Shown here: one piece after another, positions 6,907 through 29,159 of the stretch
How the letters are laid out: each line of letters starts with the position of its first letter
Position numbering within the stretch: position 1 is the stretch's first letter
IMG/VR virus record: IMGVR_UViG_3300034358_000008
Coordinates: 248,001 to 312,000 of that record
Length of the DNA: 64,000 nucleotides
Direction: 5' to 3' (one strand)
Notes under the pieces: generated by a model
Database searches by the model: none
Seen by the model: only the letters and a program-made list of their open reading frames with translations
What the model was told of the DNA's origin: nothing
Program-made: the position numbers and the translations under genes

Positions 6907-7776
6907 TTAACGAAGGTAGTTAGGACGACGAACACCTTTAGCACGATCCCAATCAAGAATCTTGATCAGTTCCGATACATCACGATGCTCAGCAGACTCC
7001 AACCCAAGGCGTGTACGCTTCTGGTTATCATCTTGGATCTTCCACAGTACATCAGGGGTGATCTGACGTTCAGGGATGATCATTGCTTCTTCAGCTGTGA
7101 AGTTTTCCAGAGCAGGAGAAGTATATTTGTTAGCGGTAAAGATACCACCTTCACCTACGAAGTCCCATGTAGAGATTTCACGGGTGTACTTAATGCCACG
7201 GTATTGATCGTCCTGAGTAATAGAACGTACCGAACAGTAAGTGTTAATGCTTGGGTTATCCAGCGAGTCTTTGAAGACTTGAGCAAAAGGACCGTAAGGT
7301 TTAACTTCAGCTACAACCATCTTGACAGGCTTACCCTGCTCATTCGTACCTGGAACAATAGTCAGGTTACGGATGTGTGCACAAACGCGGTTGTCGTCGA
7401 TCTGACGAATCCGCATGAGGTACTCAGCATCAGAGAGTGGCTTACGAACAACCCGACCATCGATCATGAGATCTTGGAATGGTTCAGGGTGTTTGAACTC
7501 CATGAACAAAACGCCTTTCTTAAGACGTCTCATCAAAGAACTCGATGGTTCAAACATCGCTACGCCGGATGCTTCATCATAAAACATACCAGCGGAGTTT
7601 TGTGTACCATAGCTACCAACCACGAGGGTGTAGTAACCGTCAGCATCCGCAGGAAGGATGCCGCGTTTGTTAGTACCAGCCAACATCGCACAACCAACAG
7701 TAACTGCTGATTGCGCCAAGGCAACTTGACCAGATGGGTTAGGGATCGTTCTCCCTCGGATAAGACCTAAGTTCAT
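6907..7776 (-). CDS. prohead (head maturation) serine protease, phiKZ gp175-like / T4 gp21-related
   Basis: EFKHPE (catalytic His) and CSVRS (catalytic Ser) motifs, TWDFVGEGG, and SPALE|NF candidate autocleavage site; position downstream of vRNAP beta. Confidence 0.85.
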   Translation of the reverse strand: MNLGLIRGRTIPNPSGQVALAQSAVTVGCAMLAGTNKRGILPADADGYYTLVVGSYGTQNSAGMFYDEASGVAMFEPSSSLMRRLKKGVLFMEFKHPEPFQDLMIDGRVVRKPLSDAEYLMRIRQIDDNRVCAHIRNLTIVPGTNEQGKPVKMVVAEVKPYGPFAQVFKDSLDNPSINTYCSVRSITQDDQYRGIKYTREISTWDFVGEGGIFTANKYTSPALENFTAEEAMIIPERQITPDVLWKIQDDNQKRTRLGLESAEHRDVSELIKILDWDRAKGVRRPNYLR

Positions 7777-11791: not shown

Positions 11792-11989
11792 TTAGCAGTT
11801 CAGATGTTTAAGCATACGACCAACCAATGCGGCTTTAATGTCCGCAGCGGAGAGCGATTCGCCTTCGATGGTGTTGGCAGCCGATTCGGAGCCCAGGGAG
11901 CGCAGAATTGCTTCTGCACCCAGTTCAGCAGCAGCGGTCAGAACGGCAAGGTTCTGTCCGAAGACTACGTTGTTACTTTGCTTTTGCAT
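11792..11989 (-). CDS. small protein in the vRNAP/head operon
   Basis: GAGGA RBS before ATG 11989; 65 aa; overlaps the stop of the vRNAP beta gene. Confidence 0.75.
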   Translation of the reverse strand: MQKQSNNVVFGQNLAVLTAAAELGAEAILRSLGSESAANTIEGESLSAADIKAALVGRMLKHLNC

Positions 11990-14900: not shown

Positions 14901-16415
14901 CTCATTAGCATACTGCATGGCTTCCTTAACAGTTAACCCAGAACCGAATGGGTCTGGCATTGTCTCGTAAGACATCGCTTGATCCACAGCTTGTTCAAAG
15001 CTACGTTCAGAAATCATGTTGGTCTTAGCCAAACGATACGCTCGCTTAGCAACACCGTCCAACATGTCATCGCCAGTAGAGAACTCTTCCTGCTTAGGTG
15101 CACCCGGTTTACGCTCTTCTACTTTAAGTGTCTTGGTAGCTGCCTCAGACATCTCATCGGTTTCGATGTGAAGTGTGGTGCTATCCAAATCTAACTCAGG
15201 TGGAGGAGTATAGGTGACTTGCAGAACATCAAGATCGAATGTCTTGTAGACCTTACTGAGAGGTTCAGCAACTTCCGTAACATCAATCTCTTCAACGGGT
15301 TCTTCAACAACAGCCTCTACTTCCGTATCACCGTTATCGTTCTCTTCAAGATCCTCAGTCATATCTGGTTGAGGAGCTTCAATCTCAGCTACGGCTTTCA
15401 ACAGGTTGTTAGCTTGTACGTTAGCATCGTTCTCAACGAGTGCTTGACTACCGTTAGCAAATTCAACCAGTGTGGTTACCAGACTGATGAAACGACGCTG
15501 CAATACTTCAGGTTTGAAATAAGCTTCCAGACCAAAGTCATCGATGTACGATTCAAAGCCCATTGCATAGAGAGATTCTTTGTCGTTATTCTCGAGTGCT
15601 ACCTTCTGAGCAGCCAAAGCCAACACGTCTTCTTCAATTTCTTCCTCGGTCTGTGTACGCCACTCATCGAGCTTACCAAGGTTGATAACAAAGAAGCTAC
15701 CTTGGACACGGATGAAGAAGTTAATCTGCGCTAGCGCTGCCTTAGGCACCTTAGAGATGTAACTAGACTTACGCTCCAAGCCAAGGAACCGATAAACATC
15801 AAACAGATTCAAAAGACTACCCGTATTGAACAGCTCCAAGAGGTGTTGGTTCTGGGAAGTCTCAAGTTGTTTGAACTGAGCGATGGTTGGCATCCGCTCA
15901 GGGATATGCAGTTCCATGAAATGGTTCCAGTGAGGGAACCGGTCTACAGCTTTCGCTACGCCGTCCCAAACTGTTGCAGCATTGTTACTCCAGCGGTAGT
16001 ACGTTGCCTTATAACTGGCAATGTAGCGATACAGCGGGTTGAGCATGTTGTAGTTGAACAACGCGACGTTCTGTTGATTCAAACGTACCGATTCATCACG
16101 ACGCAGTGGTTTGAAGAAACGATGTTGTTTACGGAATTCGTTCATGAGGGTGATAGGTAACACCCCTGTACGCTTAGGACTACCATCAAGGGTTTCCAAC
16201 TGAGTAAAGTGTTCAATGAACACCTTACCTTTCAGCTTAGCGATAATAGGGTCAGCTTGGCTAGGTCCCATTACCGCAGTGTTGTCATCCCAGAAGTGAT
16301 AGACGGTCTCTATCGGGAAATCAAATTTCTTAATGGCGTGCAGACGAGGAGACTGAAGCTCCCCAACCTGACGCAGACCGTAGTCTCTAAGAAACTGTAT
16401 AATTTTTAAGCGCAT
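11973..16415 (-). CDS. virion RNA polymerase beta-like subunit (phiKZ gp178-like)
   Basis: 1480 aa; beta motifs FLSNGVTY, SESTVDSGDVG, GDKAVL-x-NQMK, PIDIIF; long phage-specific N-terminal region. Confidence 0.93.
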   Translation of the reverse strand: MRLKIIQFLRDYGLRQVGELQSPRLHAIKKFDFPIETVYHFWDDNTAVMGPSQADPIIAKLKGKVFIEHFTQLETLDGSPKRTGVLPITLMNEFRKQHRFFKPLRRDESVRLNQQNVALFNYNMLNPLYRYIASYKATYYRWSNNAATVWDGVAKAVDRFPHWNHFMELHIPERMPTIAQFKQLETSQNQHLLELFNTGSLLNLFDVYRFLGLERKSSYISKVPKAALAQINFFIRVQGSFFVINLGKLDEWRTQTEEEIEEDVLALAAQKVALENNDKESLYAMGFESYIDDFGLEAYFKPEVLQRRFISLVTTLVEFANGSQALVENDANVQANNLLKAVAEIEAPQPDMTEDLEENDNGDTEVEAVVEEPVEEIDVTEVAEPLSKVYKTFDLDVLQVTYTPPPELDLDSTTLHIETDEMSEAATKTLKVEERKPGAPKQEEFSTGDDMLDGVAKRAYRLAKTNMISERSFEQAVDQAMSYETMPDPFGSGLTVKEAMQYANEDYTVPVDAYPDKATIMDKAMLKSVHKPMMRKYIKTLLPKDILNGIMFIQRQGVSVTDIKIRENEDVMNHTQTFTVTVKPVRGVSSNLEFTIPVIDRDGRFLSNGVTYRQRIQRADIPIRKVNPMKVALTSYTNKTFVLRSERADNNYDKWLTRQLDVKARDESNAIISNPKFAEIDLSSFQGLPRVYTALATKFSAFDNGDIHFFFNYPQREEHFQSKYGITAANVERDGLVLVGAYQNSPVVVDQQGVFYLQESLTDLEPMGTIVDLAGLNMTKAPLESVDVKVGGKDLPLGLVLGYQFGFNNLLEKLGVEYTAYPRGTKGVVIQQDEWVLAFNDEVLVFPRSDYKAMLVLGGLRRYHKSLRNYSRYDFNRKDVYFRILAEQDMGARFLKEIDFLFEAWLDPITKGLLEEMGEPTDFEGLLYRSVELLMTDWSPNEVDGAYMRYRGYERIAGQIFSSLSKAVKRYNSREGSTELKVVLDRHEVWRELNDPTVATIEDSNPIANLREQEAMTYRGSGGRAAVSMVARTRVYGDNDRGIISESTVDSGDVGIIAYMTPDANFTSMRGLTRVFDESIDTKSKLFSTSALLGVGMAHDDMKRIGFASIQQQQGLYADGYDLSPVRTGYEQVVAQRTSSIFATSADEDGEVVSIDKHAVTVKYASGELDSMPLGTIHGSAAGVVYPHALVSDLKKGDKFKRGDTISYNRKYFKKDRYNPTQASLMPGVIGVVVFSDNLDTLEDGSVVSESMAIKLNTQTSDVKNVIVRFDQHVRDLVKEGEHLDLNSILCIIEDPETAGNTLFDEASIETLKRLSAATPTAKVVGTVSRIECFYHGDLDDMSDNLRKLAEKSDEWRAESARQRGRPAHSGEVDSSFRIKGQVLEPDSMVIRIYIDHDIPFGTGDKAVLCNQMKTVISRVMTGVNKLEDDTPIDIIFGNTSVEERMVMSPKLIATTSMLLKQLSKHIAGVYRGTKHAKAK

Positions 16416-16418
16416 GAA

Positions 16419-18071
16419 TTATTTCCTTGGCTGAGGATCGCCTGTCATGTACCGGAGCGTAAGGTTAAGGGTATGGATGTTCAGAGAGAACGCAATACCA
16501 CCACCGGCTCGGATATAAGCCAAACGGGACTTAAAGAATTTGTTGCATTCAGCAATCGACTCATTCGAATAACATGCAATCCACGAAGTAGTGTCACCAT
16601 CGAAGTCGGCAGTCAGTGGAGCGAGGGTTGCTGGGGGTAGAGAAATAGAGTCGTGCCATTGAGCAGGCTTGTTCAACTCGAACACTGGGAATTCCAGAGC
16701 CAGTGGCAAATCAGGATCACGCTTCCAATCCCAACCAAGTTGGTGACGAAGCTCACCTTTAACGGTGGTCTTGAGATACATACGGCACGGAATAGAACTG
16801 TTATAGTTCTCAATCGGATAACGTGTAACGAATCCAACTGTGGTGTTCCACATAGATAAGCCGCTCAGGTAAACTAGCTCGGCATACGTCAGTGGGAATA
16901 CGAATTCCTTGTTCAAATGCTTAGGCAAAGACGTGATATCACGGAAGATCTTGAAGTTAGAATCTTTGTCTTTGTAGATCAGTGCCAGATAGTGACCTTC
17001 AATCTCAATCGCTCGAGAACGTTGTTCCACTACTTTCAATTCGTTGATCACCTTCTCCAAACCATCTGGAGTAGCCCAACGATCGAGGATGTCTGTACCT
17101 ACGTCAACCCATTCCAGCTTAAGGGTCTTTTTGTTGATGAGTTCTACCCGTTGAGTCAGGGAATCGAATACATCACCGATTACCGAATTACGTAGACCAT
17201 AGATCGTCTTAGGTTTAACCGATACTGCACCTTGATACAACCCGATAGCAACGTCCTTAAACTTAGGACGGTTAGGGAGATCCAAGTCAGCGGCGTTAGT
17301 ATCCAGCGAGGAGATCACGTTTCGTGTACCGTTGAATACTTTACGAGATGCCCAGTTAGACTGAATGAAACCACCCTTACCCGAGAGCAGACGTTCGTAG
17401 TGGTTATAGATCTCCATCACGGTGTTCTGCAAAGCTACTCGTTTACGGTCGTAGATACTCAGATCGTCATTAGGACCGAAGTATTCAGGTACGTCACGAG
17501 ACTGCTGGAGAAGCCGTCTGTAGAGTTCATTCACTTCATCCATAGTGGTGCGGCCATAAGCATCGATCTCGACCTCACGGAACGCAGCAGGAGCTACTAG
17601 GAACTGTTTCAGGATACAATTGTCTTTATACTTCTCAATCAGCTGCAATCGGTTGAGTCGGATACCGGAACCGGTGGATTTGAAGTCGACGTCTTTCCAG
17701 TTGTCGTAGAAGAAGGTGTAGCCAGTCTTTCCATTAAGCTCGTTAGCTGGGACGAAGTCTTTAAGATCTCTGTCAAAGATGGCGAAGGCTTTACCGAGGA
17801 TGATGTCTTCATAGAAACCTTTCAGTTTAAGAATGTTACGGTAGATCACCGGATGGATTACGGGCAAACCTAGTTCTATGTAACCGAAGCGAGATTCACG
17901 TTCATTAGAACTGATTCGACCGAAGATCTCAGTCGAGAACAAACCCTTCTCGTGGAAGTTGCCACCTAAGCCTTCAAAGATCTCATGACTCGTTACTTGA
18001 CCCAAGAAACCAAGCTGTGCTTTGGTTGGAATCAGTAGTGAGATGTTGAAGGGCAACAATGCCTTTTTCAT
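16419..18071 (-). CDS. virion RNA polymerase beta'-like subunit (phiKZ gp180-like)
   Basis: GLFSTEIFG, K-G-IQ motif, catalytic ADFDGD. Confidence 0.93.
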   Translation of the reverse strand: MKKALLPFNISLLIPTKAQLGFLGQVTSHEIFEGLGGNFHEKGLFSTEIFGRISSNERESRFGYIELGLPVIHPVIYRNILKLKGFYEDIILGKAFAIFDRDLKDFVPANELNGKTGYTFFYDNWKDVDFKSTGSGIRLNRLQLIEKYKDNCILKQFLVAPAAFREVEIDAYGRTTMDEVNELYRRLLQQSRDVPEYFGPNDDLSIYDRKRVALQNTVMEIYNHYERLLSGKGGFIQSNWASRKVFNGTRNVISSLDTNAADLDLPNRPKFKDVAIGLYQGAVSVKPKTIYGLRNSVIGDVFDSLTQRVELINKKTLKLEWVDVGTDILDRWATPDGLEKVINELKVVEQRSRAIEIEGHYLALIYKDKDSNFKIFRDITSLPKHLNKEFVFPLTYAELVYLSGLSMWNTTVGFVTRYPIENYNSSIPCRMYLKTTVKGELRHQLGWDWKRDPDLPLALEFPVFELNKPAQWHDSISLPPATLAPLTADFDGDTTSWIACYSNESIAECNKFFKSRLAYIRAGGGIAFSLNIHTLNLTLRYMTGDPQPRK

Positions 18072-18138: not shown

Positions 18139-21100
18139 ATGGCTAAAAAGACTATTCCTCTCGTCAAACCAAAAGGTACTGACGGCAAGGGGAACATCAA
18201 AGTACCGGGCGGTCCGTTGGTTCTAGACCTGGGCGATTTTGACGATATGTTTGGTCCTCTGGAGAGTGATTCTCCTAAGGGCGGACCTCTCGACGAATTC
18301 TGGTCAGGGATGAAAGAATCATTCAGTGATCGTGTACAGGTTAAAGATGTAGTCAGAAACTTTTTACGCTCGGCTGCTCCTGATGGTATCTCTAACCTGA
18401 TGGGCTTTGCCGATGAGGCATTGAGCGCATCTCGGGATATCAAAGAGTCTCTCGAACGTACTAACGCATCTGACCTACAATACATCGCTAAGCGGGCGCA
18501 AGCTCTCCTACCGAAATTACAAGACTACGCACCTGAAGGTATTTACAACGACATCAGTCAGGGTCTAGAGAATAAGATTGACGAGTACGACTACACGATT
18601 CAATCGGCTCGTGATCAAACTCCTATTCGTCGGGCTGCTCAAGAACGAACTGAAACTAGTGAGATCGAATCGGCACTGGACAACATTGCTCTCTCGAGCA
18701 AGGTTAACCACAACCGCTCAGAACATGGCGCTCAAGTACGACATAACCAAACTCGTGCAGAAGCCAGTGTTCGTGATTTGCTCAAAACTAAACGCTTTGA
18801 CTTCATGGCTAAGTCCATGGGCATGGCGAATGATAGCCTTCAACAAATTAATGGTTACAACCAACAGGTTAACTTTGGCTTCCAGCGTAAAGGCTTGGAA
18901 CTCCAATTCCGTAGCTACATGGGTATCAAGGAACTCATCAAGCTTCAGGAAGCTAACCTTGAATTGAATGCTCGTGCATTTAATGCGATGATTCGTAACA
19001 CCGGCATGACTGACTTCGAGAAGAACGGGAATAAAGACCTGCAATCGATGGGTGGTCAAGGTGGTGGTAAGCGTCAAGGGTTGGTATCGAAAGCTACTAA
19101 CAAAACCCTTTCTCACTTCCTTGGTAATTATGGTGGTGAAGCACAAGGTCGTATCTCAGGCGACATCAGTCAGAAACTCAGCATGGCCGTAATGGCTATG
19201 AAGATGGGTGAAGGTTCTGGCGGTAGCATGTGGAAGAACAAGTACAAGATGGCAGGTAACTTTGCTGGCGATCAAGCTGGCGACTTCATCTTGAATGAAC
19301 TGATTCCAATGTTGGGTCGTGAGGCTCGTCCGGGTCTGACTCGTGCTTCTGACAAACACTTAGGTGGCGCACACAACAAGGTTGGTTATGCGTTGGATAA
19401 CATCCCTGCGTTCTTGCAGGAGTTCGTTAACAACAACCAAAACCAACACGGGATGAAAGGAAAGCTCAGAGGTTTGATCGCTCCATACGTCCCACAGTTC
19501 GGTCTTCAAGATCGCACGAAGAGTTCCAACTATCAAACAATTGATCAACCTGCCCAGTTTAACCAAATGACTCAACGAACTATCGTTGATGCTCTCCCCG
19601 GTTACTTGGCACGTATTCTTCAAACTCTCCGTCAGATTAAGACAGGTAGTGACGATGTTGGTCGTGAGATTTGGGACTTCACCACAGGTAAGTTTACAGT
19701 AGAAGGTTCGGCCCATGATAGCCTCCTAGCTAAGATCGTTCCTAAGAATGCTATCCGTTCTGCATCGACTACTATTAACGACGCACTGAACACGATGGAC
19801 TCCGGGGGCAACCTTAGCCCTAAGGCTCGTCAAGCTTTGTCCGAACGTATGTTGCGTGATGCATCTACTAACCGTCGTTTCGATCCAGAGGCTTATGTCA
19901 AGTCTGGTGGTTATGCTAAAGACATGCCTGCCGATGTTGCTAAAGAGCTGGAAGGCTTCTTTAATAGCAAGTTCGAGATGGATGGTCAAGGCGGGATGGT
20001 CGATAACGCCAAGAACAACAAACTCCGTCAAGAGTTTTCTCAAGCGTTCTTGGATATCCGTAGTATCTCTCGTGATCCAATCAAAGAGATCTCACGGATT
20101 ATCGATTCGGGTCACACTGATGGTCTGCGTGCTATCGGTATCATTATTACTGAGGATGGGATCGATAAGATCAACTACCCTCGTATCTGGGAACTACTGC
20201 GAAGTGGTGTAACGGATGGTAACCCATTCGGTCCAGGTGGTAATGGTGGACATGATCCAAGCCGTGATGATCAATCGGGTAACGCGGGTCATAAAGACTT
20301 CATGGGACCTAAGGCTCCAGGTGATGCCGATTGGGTTAAGGGTAAGCTGAGTCGGTTCCGTACCAAGTATGCTCCTGAAGAACAAGCTGCTCGTGATCAG
20401 ATGGCTAAACACCTGAAGACTATGCGTGGTCGTTTCGGTAGTGCTGCTAACCATGTTCAAGACATGGCTTCCAACTTACCGGGACAGTTCCAAGACCTCC
20501 AAAAACAAGCCGGTGAAGCAGGTGGTTATTCCCAACTGTTGAGCGGTAAGTATAAAGGCCAGATGCAGGGTATGGCCGATACCGGGATGGCTGGTTTCAA
20601 TCAGTTCGTCGGTAAAGCATCTAACGTTGTAAACGACGCCGTCAGCAGTGTTGTTCACCGCTCCGAAGATGTTATCACAGACCTGTATTCCCAGTTCGAT
20701 AAGAACTATCCGGCATTGCGGGCTAAGGATTTCGTTAACGGTAGTCTGATCGATGTTAACACCAAGCAAATTATTACCAAGCTCAGCGACATCACGGGTA
20801 AAGTAATTAACATGGCTGGTGACACCATCCTGACCGCCAACGAAGTAGCTGCTGGGCTGATGAACCCAAATGGCGATATCGTTCTTAAGGTAGATGGGAA
20901 TTCTACCAGTAAGGTTGGCGATGCAATCGATAAGAACCAACCTAAGCTTAACGGTGAAGGTGGGTCGGGTGATCCACAAGATCCTAACTCGGAAGAGAAC
21001 CTCAATTCTCAAGACTGGGCACTTGGTCCCGGAGAGAATATCGTCCTTACTGCCCGTGGATTACTTAACGGTGAGTATCGAGATGAAGCAGGTAAGATCA

Positions 21101-24100
21101 TCAACTCGATTAAGGATATTGCTGGTGACGTCTTTGACAAAACTGGTAACGTAGTCCTGACAGCTAAAGAGTTTGCTGGTGGTCTGTGGGGTCGTCGTTC
21201 TGGTACTCGTTATCGTCCGACTAAGAACTTTGCTCGACTTCTTCGGTTGGGTAAAGCTGCCGGTAGGTTCTCCAGTCAGTCGGCTGGTACTATCGCTTGG
21301 GGCGCTACTAAGTTTATGGCTAAGGCCACACTTGGTATTGCATCTCGTCTGTTCAACATCTTCGTGGATAACCAGAACGCCTATACTGAAGGTGACCCTA
21401 TCCCAGTATTGACTCGTCGCTCTTTGGCTAACGGTGAATACTTTGATGATAAGGGTAAGGTCATTGAGAACTTTGTGGATGTGTATTCCATTATCCACGA
21501 TGCTAAAGGTGAACCGGTAATTCCTGCTGATCAATATAAACTACTCAAGAACTACGATGGTACTCGTCACGTACTGGCGAAGAACAAACGTATCTGGGGT
21601 AAGTTGGTCATGCGTCCTCTTCGGGCCATGCGTAACGCTTACGCTCGTCAAACCAAGAAGTACTACAAATGGCTCGGTAAAACGTCCGTTAAAGTAGGTG
21701 GTTGGGTAGGTAAGAAAACGTTGGGTGGTTTCGCTAAAGCAGGTGGGATGATCTTCAACCGCATGTTTGAGAAGATCCCTGATGAACAGCGTGCTACAGC
21801 GGAAGCGACAGCTGCCGGTGCATCCGTAGCTAACCAGCCTGTTGTCGAGGGCCTTCAAGAAATTCTTCAAGAACTGAAAGATCAGAAGCCTAAAGAAATC
21901 CGTAAGGGTAGCTGGCAAGATAAAGACGGGAAGAAAGAAGAAGGCGAGAAAGAGAAGAAAGGTGACGCGAAAGAAGAGAAGAAAAGTGGCTTCTTAAAAC
22001 GTGGCCTTGCTGGTATTGCCGGTATGTTAGGCCTGGGCGGTAAGAAAAAGAAAGACGATGGTGAGGAAGGGGAAGAAGACGAAGATGGTGGTATCATGGA
22101 CTCCATCAGTGGTGCTGCTGACATCAACTCGCTCTCGGGAGGGAAAGGCGGCAAGATCATGAAGTGGGGTAAGAAACTCATCGGCGGTAAAGCCAGTAAA
22201 ATGCTCGGTAGCATAGCTAGCTCGAAGGTTGGGCAGTTTATCGGTAAAGCTGGCGGCCAAATGCTGATGCGTGGTGCCATGATGGCAGGTACCGCTATTG
22301 CTGGGTTGTTGAGTGGACCTGTACTACTCATCGCTGCGGCAGTTGCCGTAACGGCAGGTGCAGCGTACCTTGGTTGGAACCGATACAAAAATATCTCGGG
22401 TGAATTCCGTGAACTGCGGTTGGCTCAGTACGGTGTTGATAAACCGGTTAGCAAAGGTTTTATCGATTCCATTACATCGATGGATATGTTTAGTCTTGGT
22501 GGCGACAAAATCAAGATTCTCAAGATGGAAGGATTGCTTGATAAATTCACATCCAAAGACGCAGAGAAACCCCAAGTTAACATCAGTGGTGCAGGTGGTC
22601 AAGAACTGCTTGACATCATGGGTATTGACATTGACGACGAAGCTGCTGTAATGGTGTTTGCACGTTGGCTCGAGAAACGTTTTAAACCAGTCTATCTCCA
22701 GTGGATTGGTGGTTTGAACAAGATCGGTCAAGGTACCGTTAATATCAACGACGTCGACGATAAAGTCCCTGAAGAACTGAAAGGTGATTTCCTTGAGACC
22801 ATTCGATTCCCTTACAACAACGAGTCTCCTTACGTTGTAACCGAAAACCCATTCAGCCCAAGCTATCCCCTCCCTAACAACATGGACGTAATCTCTAAGA
22901 TGTTCGATGAACTCAAAGAGAAGTACGGCTTGAAGAAGAAAGAGGCGGAAGAGAAGAAAGCTGCTGAGGCTGGCAAAGACGGTAAACTGGGTACTCCTGC
23001 CGATGTGGCGAAGTCTGCTACTGATGGGATTGCTAAAGATGCTGTTGCTGCAACTGGTGGTGCCGCTGCTGGCGCTGGTGCAATGTCTGCTGCTCAAAAG
23101 CTGGCTAATGAAGCTAGTCAGAAAGATAAGACAGAGCAAGACAAGTTGAAGTCGCCTACTGAAGTTGCCAATGCAGGTGTGTTGTCTGCAAGCCAAGCTG
23201 TGGCTGGTATGAGCGGTGAGATTGCTGACCTTAGCGCGAAGTTGGGTCGTACTCTAACGGCGCTCCAAGCGATCCGTATGCGTGCGTACGGTATGCAGTT
23301 CCTTACCGCCGCTGAAGTTACTGCTGTATTAGCGTTGGAAGCTATCTATGCAAAAGACCTGACTGTATCAGCTACTAGTGTGGACTACGGCGGTGACGCT
23401 GGAGTACTACTTAGTGAAGCTGGACGTCTGTTGGGTAAAGATACTGCTATCGGTGCTGATGATCGATATGCATTGCATGGCTGGCTGACTAACCGTTTCA
23501 CTCCTGTGTTCCGTGCATACTTCGGTGCTGCTCGTAACGTTCAACCTGCGGCTAGTCTGGCTGGTTTGGAATCGAAACTGACCGCCAGTGATAAGGTTAC
23601 AGTGGCTACTGCCATGTTGGGTGCGTTGGATGCATTCAAACGCTCTATTTGGGATGCTCCATCGTTGTTTGAAATTATGGGCGATCCTAAACAGTTGAAG
23701 GCTCTGGCAGATGCTGATCTGGCATCGTTGCAGAAAGACGCTGAGAAAGAAGCCCTTGCGACTCCTACTCAGAAATCATCCGATGCCGTAGCGGGTAAAG
23801 CAGCTGCTGATAAAGGTGGTAGTTTCGCAGATCAAGTCATGTCAGGTATTAAAGATACTTGGGACTCGGCTAAAGAAACTGTTTCGTCTGCATGGAACAA
23901 TGCAACTGATGCCGTTGGTGATACTGTCGCCGGTGCTAAGATTGCATTGGGTATGGGTCCAGAGTTTGGTGGTGGCGGTACAGCCAAAGGTGGTACTGTT
24001 CAGTCCGCTGGTAATACCGGTGCAGTAGTTGCTGGTAACGGTGGTCAGTGGGAAGCTATTCCTATTCCTACGGCTAGTGGGTCTATCAAAGCTGCGCTGC

Positions 24101-25254
24101 CTACACTGAAAGCTGTTTCTGGGATGACCGGTGTTCCACTGGATTGGTTGTTGGCGATCGTTGGTTTGGAATCTGGCTTCCGTTTTGGAGTTAAGGCTTC
24201 GACCTCATCGGCAACTGGGTGGTTCCAGTTCATTAATAGCACTTGGGATATCATGTATGCTAAGTGCGTTAAGAAATATGGGTTGCCGCCAGATCCAGGT
24301 AAGACTCGTGCAGGTCGTACAGATCCACGTATCAACGCCTTGCTGGGTGGTGAGTTCACGAAGGATAACTGGGAAGGTCTGAAGAAAGGTTTAGGTCGTG
24401 ATAACATCACGGATACGGATGTGTACATGGCTCACTTCTTGGGTCTGTATGGTGCATTGAAATTCCTTCGTGCTGATCCGAATGCCTTCGGGTATAAGGT
24501 CTTCAAGGATGCGTACTCTGCGAACATGCCGTTGTTCTTCGTTGATGGGAAACCATCTAAACCTCGAACGATCTCTGAGATGTATCAGATGTTCCAGGCC
24601 AAGATTGCAAAATTCTGGGCCACCACAGGTAAGGGTTATAAGTCGAGTGATGGTGGAGAAGCTTCCACTGTACCTCAAGCACAAACACCGGGTCCAGAGA
24701 AGACCCCTGAGCAAATTGCTGACGAGCAACTTCAGTCTAGTTTAAAAGAAGATGCTAAAGACAAAGATGGACTAGGTAAATCTGGTGATGGCCAAGATCC
24801 TTTGGACGTACCGGGTTCTGATAGTATCCCTACCGTAGCTTCTATAGCGGCGGATACTGCTCCAATGCCGGGTGCTCCTGCAACCGGTGGTGGTTCTAGT
24901 TCACCAAGTTCAAGCGTCAACTCTGAAGGCGCTGATTCGGGTGCTAGCTCAGTAGATACACAACGTCAATCTCAAATGGATACCGCTCAGTCTCAGAACT
25001 CTCGCCGTGAGGCGGAAGTTAGACGTGATCAAGCAACAGCTAGCGAAGTAGGGGACATTCAGACTAAACAACTGAACACACTTTACGAGATTCGTGACCT
25101 GATGAAAGTTGCGTTGGAACAGATCGGTAATAAATTCGGAGGTGGTGCTGGTGGACAACAAGGTTCGAATAGTCAATCGGGTAATAGTATGACCCCGTCT
25201 GGCATACAGAGCCGTCCAGCAGCTCAGCGACCGAGTAGCTTGACGCTGAAGTAA
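18139..25254 (+). CDS. tail-associated lytic transglycosylase / tape-measure-like protein (phiKZ gp181-like)
   Basis: 2371 aa; SLT domain near C-terminus: IVGLESGF (catalytic Glu at 24169), SSATGWFQF, YMAHFLG. Confidence 0.9.
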   Translation: MAKKTIPLVKPKGTDGKGNIKVPGGPLVLDLGDFDDMFGPLESDSPKGGPLDEFWSGMKESFSDRVQVKDVVRNFLRSAAPDGISNLMGFADEALSASRDIKESLERTNASDLQYIAKRAQALLPKLQDYAPEGIYNDISQGLENKIDEYDYTIQSARDQTPIRRAAQERTETSEIESALDNIALSSKVNHNRSEHGAQVRHNQTRAEASVRDLLKTKRFDFMAKSMGMANDSLQQINGYNQQVNFGFQRKGLELQFRSYMGIKELIKLQEANLELNARAFNAMIRNTGMTDFEKNGNKDLQSMGGQGGGKRQGLVSKATNKTLSHFLGNYGGEAQGRISGDISQKLSMAVMAMKMGEGSGGSMWKNKYKMAGNFAGDQAGDFILNELIPMLGREARPGLTRASDKHLGGAHNKVGYALDNIPAFLQEFVNNNQNQHGMKGKLRGLIAPYVPQFGLQDRTKSSNYQTIDQPAQFNQMTQRTIVDALPGYLARILQTLRQIKTGSDDVGREIWDFTTGKFTVEGSAHDSLLAKIVPKNAIRSASTTINDALNTMDSGGNLSPKARQALSERMLRDASTNRRFDPEAYVKSGGYAKDMPADVAKELEGFFNSKFEMDGQGGMVDNAKNNKLRQEFSQAFLDIRSISRDPIKEISRIIDSGHTDGLRAIGIIITEDGIDKINYPRIWELLRSGVTDGNPFGPGGNGGHDPSRDDQSGNAGHKDFMGPKAPGDADWVKGKLSRFRTKYAPEEQAARDQMAKHLKTMRGRFGSAANHVQDMASNLPGQFQDLQKQAGEAGGYSQLLSGKYKGQMQGMADTGMAGFNQFVGKASNVVNDAVSSVVHRSEDVITDLYSQFDKNYPALRAKDFVNGSLIDVNTKQIITKLSDITGKVINMAGDTILTANEVAAGLMNPNGDIVLKVDGNSTSKVGDAIDKNQPKLNGEGGSGDPQDPNSEENLNSQDWALGPGENIVLTARGLLNGEYRDEAGKIINSIKDIAGDVFDKTGNVVLTAKEFAGGLWGRRSGTRYRPTKNFARLLRLGKAAGRFSSQSAGTIAWGATKFMAKATLGIASRLFNIFVDNQNAYTEGDPIPVLTRRSLANGEYFDDKGKVIENFVDVYSIIHDAKGEPVIPADQYKLLKNYDGTRHVLAKNKRIWGKLVMRPLRAMRNAYARQTKKYYKWLGKTSVKVGGWVGKKTLGGFAKAGGMIFNRMFEKIPDEQRATAEATAAGASVANQPVVEGLQEILQELKDQKPKEIRKGSWQDKDGKKEEGEKEKKGDAKEEKKSGFLKRGLAGIAGMLGLGGKKKKDDGEEGEEDEDGGIMDSISGAADINSLSGGKGGKIMKWGKKLIGGKASKMLGSIASSKVGQFIGKAGGQMLMRGAMMAGTAIAGLLSGPVLLIAAAVAVTAGAAYLGWNRYKNISGEFRELRLAQYGVDKPVSKGFIDSITSMDMFSLGGDKIKILKMEGLLDKFTSKDAEKPQVNISGAGGQELLDIMGIDIDDEAAVMVFARWLEKRFKPVYLQWIGGLNKIGQGTVNINDVDDKVPEELKGDFLETIRFPYNNESPYVVTENPFSPSYPLPNNMDVISKMFDELKEKYGLKKKEAEEKKAAEAGKDGKLGTPADVAKSATDGIAKDAVAATGGAAAGAGAMSAAQKLANEASQKDKTEQDKLKSPTEVANAGVLSASQAVAGMSGEIADLSAKLGRTLTALQAIRMRAYGMQFLTAAEVTAVLALEAIYAKDLTVSATSVDYGGDAGVLLSEAGRLLGKDTAIGADDRYALHGWLTNRFTPVFRAYFGAARNVQPAASLAGLESKLTASDKVTVATAMLGALDAFKRSIWDAPSLFEIMGDPKQLKALADADLASLQKDAEKEALATPTQKSSDAVAGKAAADKGGSFADQVMSGIKDTWDSAKETVSSAWNNATDAVGDTVAGAKIALGMGPEFGGGGTAKGGTVQSAGNTGAVVAGNGGQWEAIPIPTASGSIKAALPTLKAVSGMTGVPLDWLLAIVGLESGFRFGVKASTSSATGWFQFINSTWDIMYAKCVKKYGLPPDPGKTRAGRTDPRINALLGGEFTKDNWEGLKKGLGRDNITDTDVYMAHFLGLYGALKFLRADPNAFGYKVFKDAYSANMPLFFVDGKPSKPRTISEMYQMFQAKIAKFWATTGKGYKSSDGGEASTVPQAQTPGPEKTPEQIADEQLQSSLKEDAKDKDGLGKSGDGQDPLDVPGSDSIPTVASIAADTAPMPGAPATGGGSSSPSSSVNSEGADSGASSVDTQRQSQMDTAQSQNSRREAEVRRDQATASEVGDIQTKQLNTLYEIRDLMKVALEQIGNKFGGGAGGQQGSNSQSGNSMTPSGIQSRPAAQRPSSLTLK

Positions 25255-25261
25255 TTCATAG

Positions 25262-25288
25262 GCCGGTCCTTCGGGACTGGCTTTATTT
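25262..25288 (+). terminator. intrinsic terminator
   Basis: GCCGGTCC-TTCG-GGACTGGC + TTTATTT. Confidence 0.8.
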
Positions 25289-25305
25289 CCCTTGAGGTTT
25301 CAATA

Positions 25306-27324
25306 ATGGCCGAAGACTTACAACCCATCTGGCTACGGAAAGCATTTATGCTTCCAGTCAGTTACGAAAAAAGTAGTTATGGTTCTAATACCAAACGCCG
25401 AATGGCTAACTCAGCAGCATTCAAATTTACGAACACCTCTCCGGGTGGCAGCTTCCCCATCAACATGTTACCCCAATACACACGCTACTGTGATATCCGT
25501 CAACCGGGTCGTGGCCGCGCATGGGAAGATCGTTTCCTAGGTATGGGTCGGTATTACTCCGAAGCTCATGACGACACCAAACAAGAACTCCACATGGCCT
25601 TTGGCGTACCACGCTTTAGTAGCTGGGCTGGATTCTTCACAAACTTCTACGACCGTAGTGCAGCATCGATGGCCAACACTGGCTCTGGTACTGGACTGTG
25701 GTATAACTTGGGTAACGCAGCAGGCTTGTTGGTATCTCTTCCAGCACAGCCGTTTATCCTTGGGTTGACTGGTACAATGAACGTACTTAGTTTCTTGACC
25801 AAGTCTCAACCTTCCAAGTGGTTCTACTTTAAACCGACGATGCACACCTACTGGTCTTCGGTAAACACCCTCGCTAACGAATTCGCTATCGGTCTAGGGA
25901 TTACTCCTTGGTTCTGGGCTAACGAATCTCCTGAGGGTACTGACCCAGGGATGAAACGTGTAACTGCTGATACTGATATGCCGGGTGCTCAGGGTACATT
26001 GCAAGACATGAAAGAGCTTCACCGTATTTTCCCATCGTTGTTCCGGGAAGATGGTGGTGTAGACGTAATGGCTCTATGTGGTCGTGCTCAACGTATGGCC
26101 GATACATCGCAACGTGAGTTCAAGGCTATGGCTGAGAAAGCACGTACTGTGGATGAACTACGAGCAGCTACTGAGAAAGCTATGGCTCAAGCTGTAGTCG
26201 ATCCTAACCCAGGTCAAGACGCACGTAAATACTACTTGGACTATCTAAACAAAGATAAGCGAAAGAATAAAGAAGGTAAAGATGAAACGGGGGTAATCGA
26301 CAACGACTTCTTCTCTAGTTGGTCTGACTTGACTCACATGTACAAATACATCGTAGGCGCACAGCACGACGGGCAACAATTCGTTACGTTACGAGCTGAC
26401 TATAACGGTGAGATATCTGAGAGCTTTACTAACTCGACACGAGACGTTGGTGTAATTCAAACGTTGAACACGAAAGTAGGTGAAGGTCGGAACAAGTCGT
26501 TCGAATTCATGGGTGGTAACATCGTAGAAGGTGCAGGTGCTGTTACAGGTATGTTGCTCGACTTTGCGGCTGGCGCATTGGACTCGGTTAACTTGGGCGG
26601 GCTTGCAGTACTTACAGGTTCGGCGTTTGTTGACGTACCTGAATACTGGGATGCGGCAACCGCCAGTCTCCCTACTGCTCAGTACACGATTCCTTTGATC
26701 ACTCCTTACGGTAACGTGATTTCTCGATTCCTTAACATCTATCTACCGCTTGCTATGATCCTCCCAATGGGTCTACCACGCTCTGCTGGTCGATCGGCAT
26801 ACACAGCCCCATTCATCGTACAACTCTTCCATAAAGGTCGCGTACAGCGTCAGCTGGGTATTGTTGACTCTATCCAGATCCGTCGCGGTACAGGTAACGT
26901 TGGTTTCAACTCTAACCACGATATGCTTGGGTGTGAAGTAACGATTGGTATTAAAGACCTTTCGAAGGTCATGCACATTCCTATTAAGGGTGGCTTCGCT
27001 TCTCCTAGTTGGATTGGTACTGGCGCTAAGTGGGCTACAGCAACTGCTTCTGAAGCGGCTACTGGTAGTGCTGCATTGGGTCTGGCACTGACGGATGGCG
27101 CAGTATGGGACGAACAATCGTTGTTTAACGATTACGTAGCTACACTGTGTTCTCAAAGTTGGTCTGACCTTTACTATGCTGGTAAGCGTTTGAACCTTAA
27201 CATCACTCGTTCTGTACAAGCTTTCAAGTCATGGCGTTCTCCATCGAACTTTGCCTCTTGGATCTTGGATGGTGACATTGCTCGTATGTTGTCTGCATTT
27301 GTACAAACCACTGATCGGTTCTAA
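25306..27324 (+). CDS. virion tail/baseplate protein (phiKZ gp182-like)
   Basis: 672 aa, GAGG RBS, directly follows the gp181-like gene; assignment by recalled synteny. Confidence 0.7.
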
Positions 27325-27366: not shown

Positions 27367-27396
27367 TAACTCTTATTCCCTCTCGTGGAGATTCAC

Positions 27397-27885
27397 ATGA
27401 ATCTGATTCAACGTATCATCGTCTGGTTGGCAACTCGGTTCCTGACCAATGGCTCTGTTGTGGACCTTTTCATTGAAAAGATTCTGGCCAAAGAAGACGC
27501 TACACATACCTTGCGCACGTTGTTCAATCGTCACAACAACACTGTGCCTGGTGATAAGAAGAACCTGAACTTCATCGCCGTGAATCATCTGTACAATATC
27601 TTCGGTACACATGAACTGGCTAAGTTACTGTTCTTCAAATCGATCAAAGAACAACGTGTCCGTTGCGCAGATGCTGCCTGTGATGAAAGTGAGTTGGATG
27701 AACTACTTGTCAAACTGCGTGACAACATTGCAACTAACCCAATGAAACGACTGTCGACCTTTAAGCAGATCCTACGAACTGCTTTGCCCCTGACAGGTGA
27801 AGAGGAGATCGCTATCCTCGCTCAGATCGCCATGTCTACCAGTCACACCCTCGTCGCCAACGCCCAATTCCTGAAAGAGATCTAA
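27397..27885 (+). CDS. hypothetical protein, paralog family B
   Basis: GGAG RBS; LA-x-RFLT and VPG-x-K shared with next gene. Confidence 0.8.
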   Translation: MNLIQRIIVWLATRFLTNGSVVDLFIEKILAKEDATHTLRTLFNRHNNTVPGDKKNLNFIAVNHLYNIFGTHELAKLLFFKSIKEQRVRCADAACDESELDELLVKLRDNIATNPMKRLSTFKQILRTALPLTGEEEIAILAQIAMSTSHTLVANAQFLKEI

Positions 27886-27887
27886 TC

Positions 27888-28415
27888 ATGTCTGCTATTA
27901 AATCCGTTGTAAAGTTCCTCGCTGATCGTTTCCTGACTAAGGACGATCTGCTGCCTGACCTGCTGGCTCAACAAGACATCACTGAACGTGCTAATAGTGC
28001 AATCGGTTTCTTCAAGCGCGAAGCTGCTCTGCTGGTTCCAGGGGGTAAGGTTTACGCTGATGCAGTGAAGGCTGCTGAAGACCTGTTGGTTACTCACTAT
28101 CGTGCTTCCAGCTTCGTACAACTGTGCCGTAGCCAAGTACGTAAGAATGCTAAGCCTGAGTACTACACGATCGCTACTATCGGCCAGATCATCGAAGCTC
28201 ATAAAGCTGATCATCGTGAAGATGACGTTGCTCCAGTGGTTGGTGGTGAAGCTGCTGCTCTGTTGGCTACCATCAATGATGCTCTGGGTGCAGCCAAGTC
28301 TGAGACTAACTTCATCAAGCGTCGTTCGATCGTTCGCAAAGCTATCGTCGCTACTCTGCCTGGCATTAGTAGTGATCGTGCTGCTGCGCTGACCGAGTTG
28401 ACTCTGCTGGTATAA
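27888..28415 (+). CDS. hypothetical protein, paralog family B
   Basis: Highly biased codon usage; aligns with previous gene. Confidence 0.85.
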   Translation: MSAIKSVVKFLADRFLTKDDLLPDLLAQQDITERANSAIGFFKREAALLVPGGKVYADAVKAAEDLLVTHYRASSFVQLCRSQVRKNAKPEYYTIATIGQIIEAHKADHREDDVAPVVGGEAAALLATINDALGAAKSETNFIKRRSIVRKAIVATLPGISSDRAAALTELTLLV

Positions 28416-28422
28416 GAATTCT

Positions 28423-28445
28423 GTCCTCCTTCGGGAGGACTTTAT
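28423..28445 (+). terminator. intrinsic terminator
   Basis: GTCCTCC-TTCG-GGAGGAC + TTT. Confidence 0.8.
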
Positions 28446-28486
28446 TCCCAGTTATGTTATGTAATCCATTAACCAAGGAACTCCCA

Positions 28487-29095
28487 ATGAGTCTTTCTCA
28501 AACTATGGCTTGGGCACATGGCCTCGAGTCTGAATCCGATGGCACTGCTCGTGAAGTAGACGTCAAGACAGTTAAGTCCTCTATCGATATCGACGATGTT
28601 GATTCGACGGACATCAAAGACAGCGATACTGAAACCAAGAATCTCACCGATGGTGGGGATGAAGTTAATGCCGATACCAATCACGACATCGTAGGTTCTA
28701 TCGAAGACCACGAAGCGGGTATTGCATCGGGTGATGCTGGCGGTAAGATCATCGAAGCCTTTGCTATCGATCCTAAATCGAATGCTCCTAAGCGTTTCGT
28801 GATCAGTGGCTTTGATGCCCAGTCTAACGATGCTGCTGAAGCTGGCGACAACCTGAATGCATGTGTGATCTTGCTGCAAAGCGGTCCACTGGGCGAAGTA
28901 GGTGTCAACGGTATCACTGCTGAAGATCTGCTTAAGGTGGTAGAAGAAACTTACGTCTGCTTCCAAGAAGGCCAGTTTGCTTGTGGAGAGAACGAAGAAG
29001 TTCTACAACACATTCGTGCTGCACAAGCTGCTATTGCTAAACGTTTCCAACGGCGTGCTGCTGAAGGTACCGAAGGCACCATGCAAGGTAACTGA
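28487..29095 (+). CDS. tad1: Tad1-family immune-signal sponge domain with acidic N-terminal leader
   Basis: C-terminal LQSGP..E.GVNG.T.EDLL.VV....CFQEGQFACGEN...L.H...A......R...R....EGT matches the Tad1 pattern as recalled; AAGGA RBS before ATG 28487. Confidence 0.8.
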   Translation: MSLSQTMAWAHGLESESDGTAREVDVKTVKSSIDIDDVDSTDIKDSDTETKNLTDGGDEVNADTNHDIVGSIEDHEAGIASGDAGGKIIEAFAIDPKSNAPKRFVISGFDAQSNDAAEAGDNLNACVILLQSGPLGEVGVNGITAEDLLKVVEETYVCFQEGQFACGENEEVLQHIRAAQAAIAKRFQRRAAEGTEGTMQGN

Positions 29096-29100
29096 CATAC

Positions 29101-29123
29101 GGCCTCCCTTCGGGGAGGCTTTA
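29101..29123 (+). terminator. intrinsic terminator
   Basis: GGCCTCCC-TTCG-GGGAGGCT + TT. Confidence 0.8.
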
Positions 29124-29129
29124 TGACGG

Positions 29130-29159
29130 CAATAGAAAAATCTTCAGATTTATATCATA
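29130..29159 (+). promoter_or_regulatory. 30-nt repeated putative early promoter (TATATCAT core)
   Basis: CAATAGAAAAATCTTCAGATTTATATCATA, identical copy at 46594-46623. Confidence 0.7.

What the first reader, a model, noticed from the sequence alone, without database searches (positions are those of the whole stretch)
28451..29095. Tad1-family anti-defence sponge with a capsid-targeting-like leader
Seen: the C-terminal ~115 aa read ILLQSGPLGEVGVNGITAEDLLKVVEETYVCFQEGQFACGENEEVLQHIRAAQAAIAKRFQRRAAEGTEGT. Against the CbTad1 sequence as I recall it, the four ligand-contact residues F82, N92, R109 and R113 are present at identical spacing, as are DLL, FQ-x-G-x-F and the His. The N-terminal ~85 aa are acidic and begin MSLSQTMAWAHGLE|SE, a typical S/A/G-x-E propeptide; TATG motifs at 28453 and 28458 suggest late expression; the gene follows the tail genes. 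Established: Tad1 sequesters gcADPR (Thoeris) and CBASS cyclic nucleotides; stand-alone Tad1 is ~125 aa. Inference: a sponge pre-loaded in the head and injected with the genome, protecting the early infection before a phage nucleus exists. Tad1-like genes may already be known in related jumbo phages; the leader and virion delivery are the points to test.
Basis: partly seen in the sequence, partly recalled or inferred. Interest (0 to 1): 0.85.

Follow-up and report, generated by a model that had tools for sequence, protein, structure and literature searches.

The report
Virion-packaged Tad1 sponge of a jumbo phage
This gene encodes the counterpart, in a new relative of jumbo phage 201phi2-1, of PhiKZ gp184: a Tad1 immune-signal sponge with an acidic leader for packaging into the phage head, which published work on PhiKZ reports as processed and injected, so the reading is sound but not new.

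Summary
An intact ORF (likely start 28487, stop 29095; 202 aa) has an acidic 73-residue leader and a C-terminal domain that matches solved Tad1 structures by sequence (E 2.9e-8) and by predicted fold. The top 20 Foldseek hits are all Tad1, with nothing else below E about 0.8. The four gcADPR/cyclic-dinucleotide contact residues of CbTad1 are present, as F159, N169, R186 and R190.

The best PDB match is PhiKZ gp184 (E 6.7e-33). The gene sits in the gp184 / 201phi2-1 gp280 position, after the gp181-like and gp182-like tail genes. A gp175-type prohead protease is encoded in the same window.

Papers held here describe gp184 as a protease-cleaved minor capsid protein, an experimentally validated injected protein, and "Tad1".

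Three refinements:
- There are two conserved S/A/G-x-E motifs, not one: G12-L13-E14, and S71-I72-E73 at the Tad1 domain boundary.
- The piece of gp184 resolved in the PhiKZ capsid appears to be a PhiKZ-type insertion that this protein lacks.
- The cyclic-trinucleotide pocket residues (CbTad1 R90/T97) are not conserved (G167/Q174).

The TATG motifs exist but say little about timing.

The parts
28423..28440 (+). Terminator-like hairpin (7-bp stem, TTCG loop, then TTTATT) ending the preceding gene
   Evidence: scan and the sequence. The same hairpin type recurs after other genes in the window.
28453..28461 (+). Two TATG tetramers (28453-28456 and 28458-28461) between the hairpin and the ribosome-binding site. 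Possible late-promoter element, unproven.
   Evidence: TATG occurs 3.25 times per kb on this strand. In the 90 nt upstream of the start it is absent in 201phi2-1, Viktualia, Phabio, PhiPA3 and PS119XW; in PhiKZ it appears only overlapping the start codon, and Noxifer has one. Only 8 of 35 intergenic upstream regions in the window carry one.
28476..28480 (+). AAGGA ribosome-binding site, 6 nt before the ATG at 28487
   Evidence: Sequence. Homologues start at the equivalent Met.
28487..29095 (+). Coding sequence, 202 aa plus stop: orthologue of PhiKZ gp184 and 201phi2-1 gp280
   Evidence: phrog_23843, E 7e-85, full length; synteny.
28487..28705 (+). Acidic leader, residues 1-73. AF2 predicts a helix at residues 3-15 and gives low confidence to the rest.
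   Evidence: charge; AF2; leader 54-65% identical across 46 clade members.
28520..28528 (+). G12-L13-E14: first conserved S/G-x-E candidate protease site
   Evidence: In register in 48 of 48 clade sequences, including SLE in PhiKZ gp184.
28697..28705 (+). S71-I72-E73: second conserved S/A/G-x-E candidate site, just before the Tad1 fold begins
   Evidence: A motif is present in 45 of 46 sequences in the equivalent stretch, against 0.32 expected from shuffled leaders. The AF2 fold starts at about residue 77.
28706..29092 (+). Tad1 domain, residues 74-202: beta-sheet plus two-helix hairpin
   Evidence: mean pLDDT above 90 for residues 91-190. (top 20 Foldseek hits are all CmTad1/CbTad1; E 1.7e-8 to 6.8e-6, target TM-score 0.68-0.80)..
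28961..28963 (+). F159, equivalent to CbTad1 F82 (gcADPR/cyclic-dinucleotide pocket)
28991..28993 (+). N169, equivalent to CbTad1 N92
   Evidence: invariant in A1
29042..29044 (+). R186, equivalent to CbTad1 R109
   Evidence: invariant in A1 and in A2 (131 sequences)
29054..29056 (+). R190, equivalent to CbTad1 R113
   Evidence: invariant in A1
29102..29119 (+). Downstream hairpin (GCCTCCC, TTCG loop, GGGAGGC, then TTTATG); likely terminator of the gene
   Evidence: Sequence. Window 29095-29158 is 86% identical to 201phi2-1 183844-183907, which contains a terminator (end at 183,876) validated in vivo as strong.
6907..7776 (-). Prohead (head maturation) protease, the gp175-type enzyme expected to process the leader
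   Evidence: phrog_3014, E 5.7e-86. (82% identical to the 201phi2-1 protein, 55% to PhiKZ-like 'head maturation protease').
18139..27324 (+). Upstream syntenic virion genes: gp181/gp276-like tail protein with a transglycosylase region (18139-25254) and a gp182/gp277-like protein (25306-27324)

Best explanation
The gene encodes the orthologue of PhiKZ gp184 and 201phi2-1 gp280: a Tad1-family sponge made as a precursor with a 73-residue acidic leader.

Proposed mechanism:
1. The leader directs the precursor into the assembling prohead.
2. The phage's gp175-type prohead protease (encoded at 6907-7776) cuts after conserved S/A/G-x-E motifs. The candidates are Glu14 and Glu73, and cutting at the second frees a roughly 129-residue Tad1 domain.
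3. The mature domain travels in the head and is ejected into the next host cell with the DNA.
4. There it can bind Thoeris gcADPR, and probably cGAMP-type cyclic dinucleotides, through the F159/N169/R186/R190 pocket before any phage protein is made.

Shown here: family membership, fold, conservation of the pocket residues, conserved motifs, synteny, and the presence of the protease. Inferred from orthologues: packaging, cleavage and injection. Inferred from residue conservation only: ligand binding.
For: - Homology: PDB phmmer gives PhiKZ gp184 at E 6.7e-33, CmTad1 at 2.9e-8 and CbTad1 at about 7e-3.
- Fold: the AF2 model has mean pLDDT above 90 for residues 91-190, and the top 20 Foldseek PDB hits are all Tad1.
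- Annotated relatives: tblastn hits include phage genes annotated 'Tad1' and 'anti-thoeris viral protein'.
- Pocket: the gcADPR residues are conserved.
- Synteny with PhiKZ gp181-gp184 and 201phi2-1 gp276-gp280.
- 201phi2-1 gp280 was identified by mass spectrometry.
- PhiKZ gp184 lies on the inner capsid surface and is cleaved by gp175 (PMC11297242).
- PhiKZ gp184 was validated as injected (PMC10449902).
- It is called Tad1, is non-essential, and its C-terminus is described as liberated and injected (bioRxiv 10.1101/2025.11.23.690004, PMC13282480).
- [SG]-x-E at residues 12-14 is present in 48 of 48 sequences. A second motif near residue 73 is present in 45 of 46, against 0.32 expected by shuffling.
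- The protease gene is in the window.
Against: - There is no direct evidence on this phage's virion, processing or ligand binding.
- The papers with the actual cleavage sites of gp184 and gp280 (Thomas 2010, 2012) and the primary Tad1/PhiKZ paper (Li 2024) were not held. The PhiKZ Tad1 activity is therefore known to me only from secondary citations.
- The 34-residue piece of gp184 resolved in the PhiKZ capsid seems to be an insertion absent here, so the mode of capsid association may differ.
- The cyclic-trinucleotide pocket and most hexamer-interface residues of CmTad1 are not conserved.
- The local Pfam copy (PF24729.2) does not score this protein.
Confidence: 0.8

Rival explanations
1. [quoted passage not shown]
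For: In the PhiKZ cryo-EM structure gp184 fills a gap between gp86 and a capsomer on the inner capsid surface.
Against: - Only 34 residues of gp184 are modelled in the capsid. By the single-mismatch argument they lie in the PhiKZ-type insertion, which this protein lacks and which is found nowhere else in the window.
- The ligand-contact residues are invariant or nearly so.
- gp184 is dispensable in PhiKZ.
- Goslar's capsid shows no gp184 homologue.
Confidence: 0.07
2. It is a Tad1 sponge made de novo in the infected cell and not packaged. The acidic leader would serve another purpose, such as localisation, solubility or regulation.
For: Most Tad1 proteins are stand-alone and lie among replication genes. 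The syntenic Noxifer homologue has no acidic leader (134 aa). N-terminal extensions in the wider family are heterogeneous.
Against: The closest characterised orthologue with the same architecture, 201phi2-1 gp280, was found by mass spectrometry, and PhiKZ gp184 is injected. The protease-type motifs are conserved in register. The gene sits among virion genes.
Confidence: 0.08
3. It is a packaged sponge with a shifted ligand range: it binds some other immune signal, or only cyclic dinucleotides, rather than gcADPR.
For: Tad1 homologues differ in ligand spectrum. The cyclic-trinucleotide pocket residues R90/T97 are replaced by G167/Q174, and the loop residue R57 by L135.
Against: All four residues whose paired mutation (F82A/N92A or R109A/R113A) severely reduces gcADPR binding in CbTad1 are conserved.
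Confidence: 0.05

Closest known systems
PhiKZ gp184 (PhiKZ Tad1; PDB 8Y6V chain I)
   Same: The C-terminal domain is 52% identical (E 6.7e-33). It has the same genome position after gp181-gp183. The N-terminal motif is the same (L-x-W-x-x-S/G-L-E-S) and there is an acidic leader. A gp175-type protease is present.
   Different: PhiKZ has an extra insertion of about 45-50 residues between the leader and the Tad1 domain, flanked by A-I-E and G-H-E. This appears to be the 34-residue beta-rich piece seen docked in the capsid. The window protein has a single S-I-E motif there and no such module.
201phi2-1 gp280
   Same: 63-66% identical over the full length, with the same leader-plus-Tad1 architecture and the same synteny. 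Identified by mass spectrometry per the GenBank note.
   Different: No DNA-level similarity is detectable by megablast, so the window comes from a distinct phage. The intergenic region before gp280 is only 21 nt and has no hairpin or TATG.
Stand-alone Tad1 (CbTad1 7UAV/7UAW/8SMD; CmTad1 8KBB-8KBD; Bacillus phage Tad1)
   Same: Same fold (target TM-score 0.68-0.80). The gcADPR/cyclic-dinucleotide pocket residues and the C-terminal G-x-E-G-T lid motif are shared.
   Different: Stand-alone Tad1 has no leader (about 122-142 aa). Its cyclic-trinucleotide pocket Arg/Thr and the hexamer-interface residues M102/W103 of CmTad1 are not conserved in the window protein. The Bacillus phage copies lie among replication genes, between SSB and recombinase.
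T4 internal proteins with a capsid targeting sequence
   Same: From general knowledge, not tested here: a short N-terminal amphipathic peptide ending in Glu, removed by the prohead protease, delivers an anti-defence cargo (IPI*) with the DNA.
   Different: No sequence relationship. The cargo acts differently (IPI* inhibits a restriction enzyme, whereas this is a small-molecule sponge), and the leader here is much longer and acidic.

Membership tests
Tad1 (Thoeris anti-defence 1) sponge family | Significant sequence similarity to experimentally characterised Tad1 proteins | tested here: met
   phmmer against PDB gives CmTad1 at E 2.9e-8 and CbTad1 at about 7e-3. tblastn hits genes annotated Tad1 or anti-Thoeris. 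Close homologues carry the precomputed Pfam domain PF24729.3, Acb2_Tad1_hairpin, although the local PF24729.2 model misses this protein.
Tad1 (Thoeris anti-defence 1) sponge family | Fold: N-terminal antiparallel beta-sheet followed by two long helices | tested here: met
   AF2 predicts strands 77-81, 87-94, 101-107 and 125-130 and helices 145-161 and 167-193, with mean pLDDT above 90 for residues 91-190. The top 20 Foldseek hits are all Tad1; the next hit has E 0.84.
Tad1 (Thoeris anti-defence 1) sponge family | gcADPR/cyclic-dinucleotide pocket residues (CbTad1 F82, N92, R109, R113) | tested here: met
   They align to F159, N169, R186 and R190. Three are invariant and one is F/Y in A1. Their role is taken from the paper read.
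Tad1 (Thoeris anti-defence 1) sponge family | Cyclic-trinucleotide pocket (CbTad1 R90/T97, CmTad1 R88/T95) and hexamer interface | tested here: not met
   The aligned residues are G167 and Q174, and CmTad1 M102/W103 align to A181/A182. This pocket is a property of some Tad1 proteins rather than a family-defining one; the Atlee 'anti-thoeris' protein also lacks the Arg and Thr.
Tad1 (Thoeris anti-defence 1) sponge family | Binds gcADPR and rescues phage from Thoeris | not testable with these tools
   Needs binding assays and plaque assays.
Virion-packaged, injected Tad1 of Chimalliviridae (PhiKZ gp184 / 201phi2-1 gp280 type) | Orthology by sequence and by gene order | tested here: met
Virion-packaged, injected Tad1 of Chimalliviridae (PhiKZ gp184 / 201phi2-1 gp280 type) | N-terminal leader with conserved S/A/G-x-E protease motifs, and a gp175-type protease in the genome | tested here: met
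   Motif at residues 12-14 in 48 of 48 sequences, and near residue 73 in 45 of 46. Protease gene at 6907-7776.
Virion-packaged, injected Tad1 of Chimalliviridae (PhiKZ gp184 / 201phi2-1 gp280 type) | Capsid-docking beta module as resolved in the PhiKZ capsid (8Y6V chain I, 34 residues) | tested here: not met
   The module maps to the PhiKZ-type insertion. It is absent from the window protein and from the 201phi2-1-like orthologues, and it has no match elsewhere in the window. This is a feature of the PhiKZ subtype only.
Virion-packaged, injected Tad1 of Chimalliviridae (PhiKZ gp184 / 201phi2-1 gp280 type) | Presence in virions, proteolytic processing, and ejection into the host | not testable with these tools
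   Known for the orthologues only.

The most novel reading that the evidence does not exclude
In the 201phi2-1-like clade the sponge has no capsid-wall docking module. The 73-residue acidic leader, with its two conserved protease sites, may therefore be a self-sufficient and portable packaging and ejection signal.

The position between the two sites would then act as a cassette slot where extra modules are inserted and released by cleavage. Two examples support this: the beta module in PhiKZ, and an insert of about 100 residues flanked by S-A-E and S-V-E in metagenomic protein P0041. On this reading the locus is a small polyprotein platform for delivering anti-defence cargo ahead of gene expression.
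Probability: 0.3. Interest if true: 0.55.

Novelty: new member of a known kind. Interest (0 to 1): 0.3.

Why it matters
The finding shows that the packaged-Tad1 arrangement described for PhiKZ extends to an unsequenced relative of 201phi2-1, and to at least 39 metagenomic relatives with the same 194-207-aa architecture.

It also gives testable detail:
- two conserved candidate cleavage sites;
- a simpler form that lacks the capsid-docking insert;
- a predicted ligand range limited to the gcADPR/cyclic-dinucleotide pocket.

It does not open a new question. The central idea, an immune-signal sponge carried in the head and injected before the phage nucleus forms, is already stated in the literature for PhiKZ.

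Tried and rejected
- **Pfam and NCBIfam:** The local Pfam-A scan of the whole protein and of the C-terminal domain found nothing significant. PF24729.2 scores a Bacillus phage Tad1 but not this protein or PhiKZ gp184. NCBIfam has no model.
- **Primary papers:** I tried to read the papers with the measured cleavage sites (Thomas 2010, 2012) and the published Tad1/PhiKZ paper (Li 2024). None is held. The 2023 preprint version does not mention PhiKZ. Supplementary tables for the capsid and transcriptome papers are not held.
- **TATG as a late-promoter signal:** The motif is real but common, and only 8 of 35 upstream regions in the window carry one. Upstream of the orthologues it is not conserved: it is absent in five, overlaps the start codon in PhiKZ, and occurs once in Noxifer. 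TTTATG also forms the tail of the recurring terminator hairpins. I rejected it as evidence of timing.
- **Another copy of the PhiKZ-type module:** A search of the window found nothing below E 1.7.
- **Shared N-terminal motif:** A search for a W-x-x-S/G-L-E motif in other window ORFs gave one loose match at 58783, which was not pursued.
- **Context of the insert-bearing homologue P0041:** It sits on a 1.4-kb contig only, and the insert matches no PHROG family.
- **The longer ORF from ATG 28454:** Rejected, because homologues lack those 11 residues.

Full report
**What is there.** One search lists an intact + strand ORF at 28454..29095. The likely start is the ATG at 28487: AAGGA lies 6 nt upstream, and every close homologue begins at the equivalent Met. 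The product has 202 aa. The gene is bracketed by two hairpins of the same type (7-bp G+C stem, TTCG loop, then TTTAT), at 28423-28440 and 29102-29119.

**Family.**
- PHROGs places the whole protein in phrog_23843 (E 7e-85) and its C-terminal part in two further families, all of unknown function.
- Against PDB sequences the best hit is PhiKZ gp184 (8Y6V chain I; E 6.7e-33; query 82-202 against 110-230). Next come CmTad1 (E 2.9e-8) and CbTad1 (about 7e-3).
- tblastn of the C-terminal domain against phage genomes finds 181 records. They include genes annotated 'Tad1' (SPG24), 'anti-thoeris viral protein' (Atlee) and 'ABC transporter ATPase', the label under which PDB lists the CbTad1 chain 7UAV.
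- An exhaustive HMMER search finds 1,694 cluster representatives at E <= 1e-3.
- An AF2 model built on 131 sequences has mean pLDDT above 90 for residues 91-190. Its top 20 Foldseek PDB hits are all Tad1 structures (E 1.7e-8 to 6.8e-6, target TM-score 0.68-0.80), and the next hit has E 0.84.

**Ligand sites.** The Li et al. preprint read names the relevant residues. CbTad1 F82, N92, R109 and R113 form the gcADPR and 2',3'-cGAMP pocket. CbTad1 R90/T97 (CmTad1 R88/T95) form the cyclic-trinucleotide pocket, which exists only in the hexamer. In the HMMER alignments an offset of +1 from chain 8kbh_I puts all named residues on the right residue types. The first four then align to F159, N169, R186 and R190. 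These are invariant (F159 is F or Y) in the ten-sequence alignment A1, and R186 is invariant across 131 sequences. The trinucleotide-pocket pair aligns to G167 and Q174, and the hexamer-interface residues M102/W103 of CmTad1 align to A181/A182. I therefore predict that the gcADPR/cyclic-dinucleotide pocket is retained. Cyclic trinucleotide binding is not predicted, and the oligomeric state is uncertain. These are inferences from residues only.

**Orthology and context.**
- The window has no close DNA relative among 50,697 phage records, apart from a 64-nt match.
- At protein level the nearest relatives are 201phi2-1 gp280 (63% by tblastn, 66% in A1), Viktualia, Phabio, PhiPA3 and PS119XW, all about 190-203 aa. 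PhiKZ gp184 follows, at 52% over the C-terminal domain.
- Gene order is conserved. A 2,371-aa gp181/gp276-like tail protein with a transglycosylase region lies at 18139-25254, a gp182/gp277-like protein at 25306-27324, then two small unknown ORFs, then this gene.
- The window also carries RNA polymerase beta-type subunit genes (by position probably the virion RNA polymerase genes) and a prohead protease at 6907-7776. The protease is 82% identical to the 201phi2-1 protein and 55% to PhiKZ-like 'head maturation protease'.

**What is already known about the orthologues.**
- The 201phi2-1 record annotates gp280 as 'identified using mass spectrometry; similar to phiKZ gp184'.
[quoted passage not shown] It states that gp184 is cleaved by the protease gp175 at previously verified sites, and that much of the protein is unresolved.
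- Fossati et al. (PMC10449902) identified gp184 as an inner-body interactor and validated its injection by western blot in translation-blocked cells.
- Chan et al. (bioRxiv 10.1101/2025.11.23.690004) call gp184 'Tad1', find it non-essential, and describe it as a protein whose N-terminus is wedged in the capsid and whose C-terminus, liberated by the head protease, is injected.

Both of the last two cite Li et al., Nature 2024, which I could not read; the 2023 preprint does not mention PhiKZ.

**The leader.** I aligned 48 clade members: the window protein, six phage orthologues and 41 metagenomic proteins.
- The motif [S/G]-x-E at residues 12-14 is in register in all 48, within a conserved L-x-W-A-x-G/S-L-E-S stretch that AF2 models as a helix at residues 3-15.
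- A second [S/A/G]-x-E lies at residues 71-73 (S-I-E). It is in exact register in 33 of 48, and a motif is present within the equivalent of residues 63-80 in 45 of 46 sequences, against 0.32 expected from shuffled leaders. The Tad1 fold begins about four residues later.
- Two further motifs, A-A-E at 116 and G-T-E at 194, lie inside the folded domain. The latter belongs to the G-x-E-G-T C-terminal segment shared with stand-alone Tad1, so I do not regard either as a cleavage site.
- The leader is 54-65% identical across the clade, against 70-75% for the Tad1 domain, so it is under constraint.

The S/A/G-x-E specificity of gp175 comes from my own knowledge of Thomas et al. 2012. The related A-x-E rule for SPN3US gp245, and the occurrence of several cuts within one propeptide, are in PMC10052503.

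**Which part of gp184 sits in the PhiKZ capsid?**
- The window model, whose Tad1 domain is 52% identical to that of gp184, does not hit 8Y6V chain I at all.
- A model of P0190, a 96%-identical representative of gp184, hits it at E 3.9e-4. The chain has only 34 modelled residues, with 97% identity and rmsd 1.4 Å.
- P0190 and gp184 differ at nine positions. Among 34-residue windows with exactly one mismatch, only those starting at residues 55-75 are beta-rich in the model. The paper describes the modelled part as mainly beta-strands.
- That region is an insertion of about 45-50 residues flanked by A-I-E (57-59) and G-H-E (106-108).
- The insertion is present in PhiKZ-type proteins (P0043, P0045-P0047) and absent from the window protein and all 201phi2-1-like orthologues. 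Nothing like it is found elsewhere in the window.

The capsid-wall docking seen in PhiKZ therefore probably does not apply here. Since the GenBank record reports 201phi2-1 gp280, which also lacks the module, as identified by mass spectrometry, packaging apparently does not require it. This mapping is an inference and should be checked against the residue numbering of the PDB entry.

**Expression signals.** TATG occurs 3.25 times per kb on this strand. In the 90 nt upstream of the orthologues it is absent in five, overlaps the start codon in PhiKZ, and occurs once in Noxifer. Only 8 of 35 upstream intergenic regions in the window contain it, and TTTATG also forms the tail of the recurring terminator hairpins. 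I treat late expression as expected for a virion protein but not shown by this motif. Window 29095-29158 matches 201phi2-1 183844-183907, which contains a terminator validated in vivo as strong.

**Wider family.** Of the 149 best representatives, 83 are compact, 50 have N-terminal extensions of at least 50 residues, and 16 have C-terminal extensions. The extensions are heterogeneous. The acidic leader homologous to this one is confined to the jumbo-phage clade. One metagenomic protein, P0041, carries an extra module of about 100 residues at the second motif, flanked by S-A-E and S-V-E. Another, P0149, fuses a PhiKZ major-capsid-protein-like region to a Tad1 domain.

**Verdict.** This is a new member of a known kind.

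Noticed in passing
window 6907-7776 (-): Prohead (head maturation) protease of the PhiKZ gp175 type. It is 82% identical to the 201phi2-1 protein and is followed by a virion structural protein gene at 7790-8509 (-).
   Followed up: partly
window 11973-16415 (-) and 16419-18071 (-): Two large genes matching phage multisubunit RNA polymerase beta-type subunits (phrog_3148, phrog_2986). By position they are probably the virion RNA polymerase genes, next to the gp181-like tail gene.
   Followed up: no
window 29095-29158: The only megablast match of this region to any phage record: 86% identity to 201phi2-1 183844-183907, an unannotated stretch. That stretch contains a transcription terminator (end at 183,876) shown in vivo to be stronger than lambda T0. 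Hairpins of the same kind (TTCG loop, TTTAT tail) recur after several genes in the window, for example upstream of 4652, 25306 and 38745.
   Followed up: partly
window 25255-25305: The 5' untranslated region of the gp182/gp277-like gene contains a hairpin. In 201phi2-1, PhiKZ, EL and PhiPA3 a conserved small RNA (sRNA005) has been reported at this position. I did not test whether the window has it.
   Followed up: no
P0041 (locus L010:449-1351): A 300-aa metagenomic homologue has the same leader and Tad1 domain, plus an extra module of about 100 residues inserted at the second protease motif and flanked by S-A-E and S-V-E. The insert matches no PHROG family, and the contig is only 1.4 kb.
   Followed up: partly
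P0149 (locus L011:465-1832): A 455-aa metagenomic protein joins a region resembling the PhiKZ major capsid protein (Pfam PF25620; phrog_3231, E 6e-8) to a C-terminal Tad1 domain. This could be another route to placing a sponge in a capsid.
   Followed up: partly
L005:1420-1824 (Pseudomonas phage Noxifer gp200): A jumbo-phage Tad1 homologue lies a little upstream of a thymidylate kinase gene, as gp184 and gp280 do, but has only 134 aa. It keeps an N-terminal K-W-L-E stretch but has no acidic leader and no S/A/G-x-E motif.
   Followed up: no
phage records behind hits H71, H78, H83, H87: Several short Tad1 homologues in Bacillus and Lactococcus phages are annotated 'structural protein'. If that rests on virion proteomics, leaderless Tad1 may also be carried in virions.
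   Followed up: no
window 27385-27885 and 27888-28415 (+): Two ORFs of 166 and 175 aa lie between the gp182-like gene and the Tad1 gene. They match no PHROG family and sit where 201phi2-1 has gp278 and gp279.
   Followed up: no
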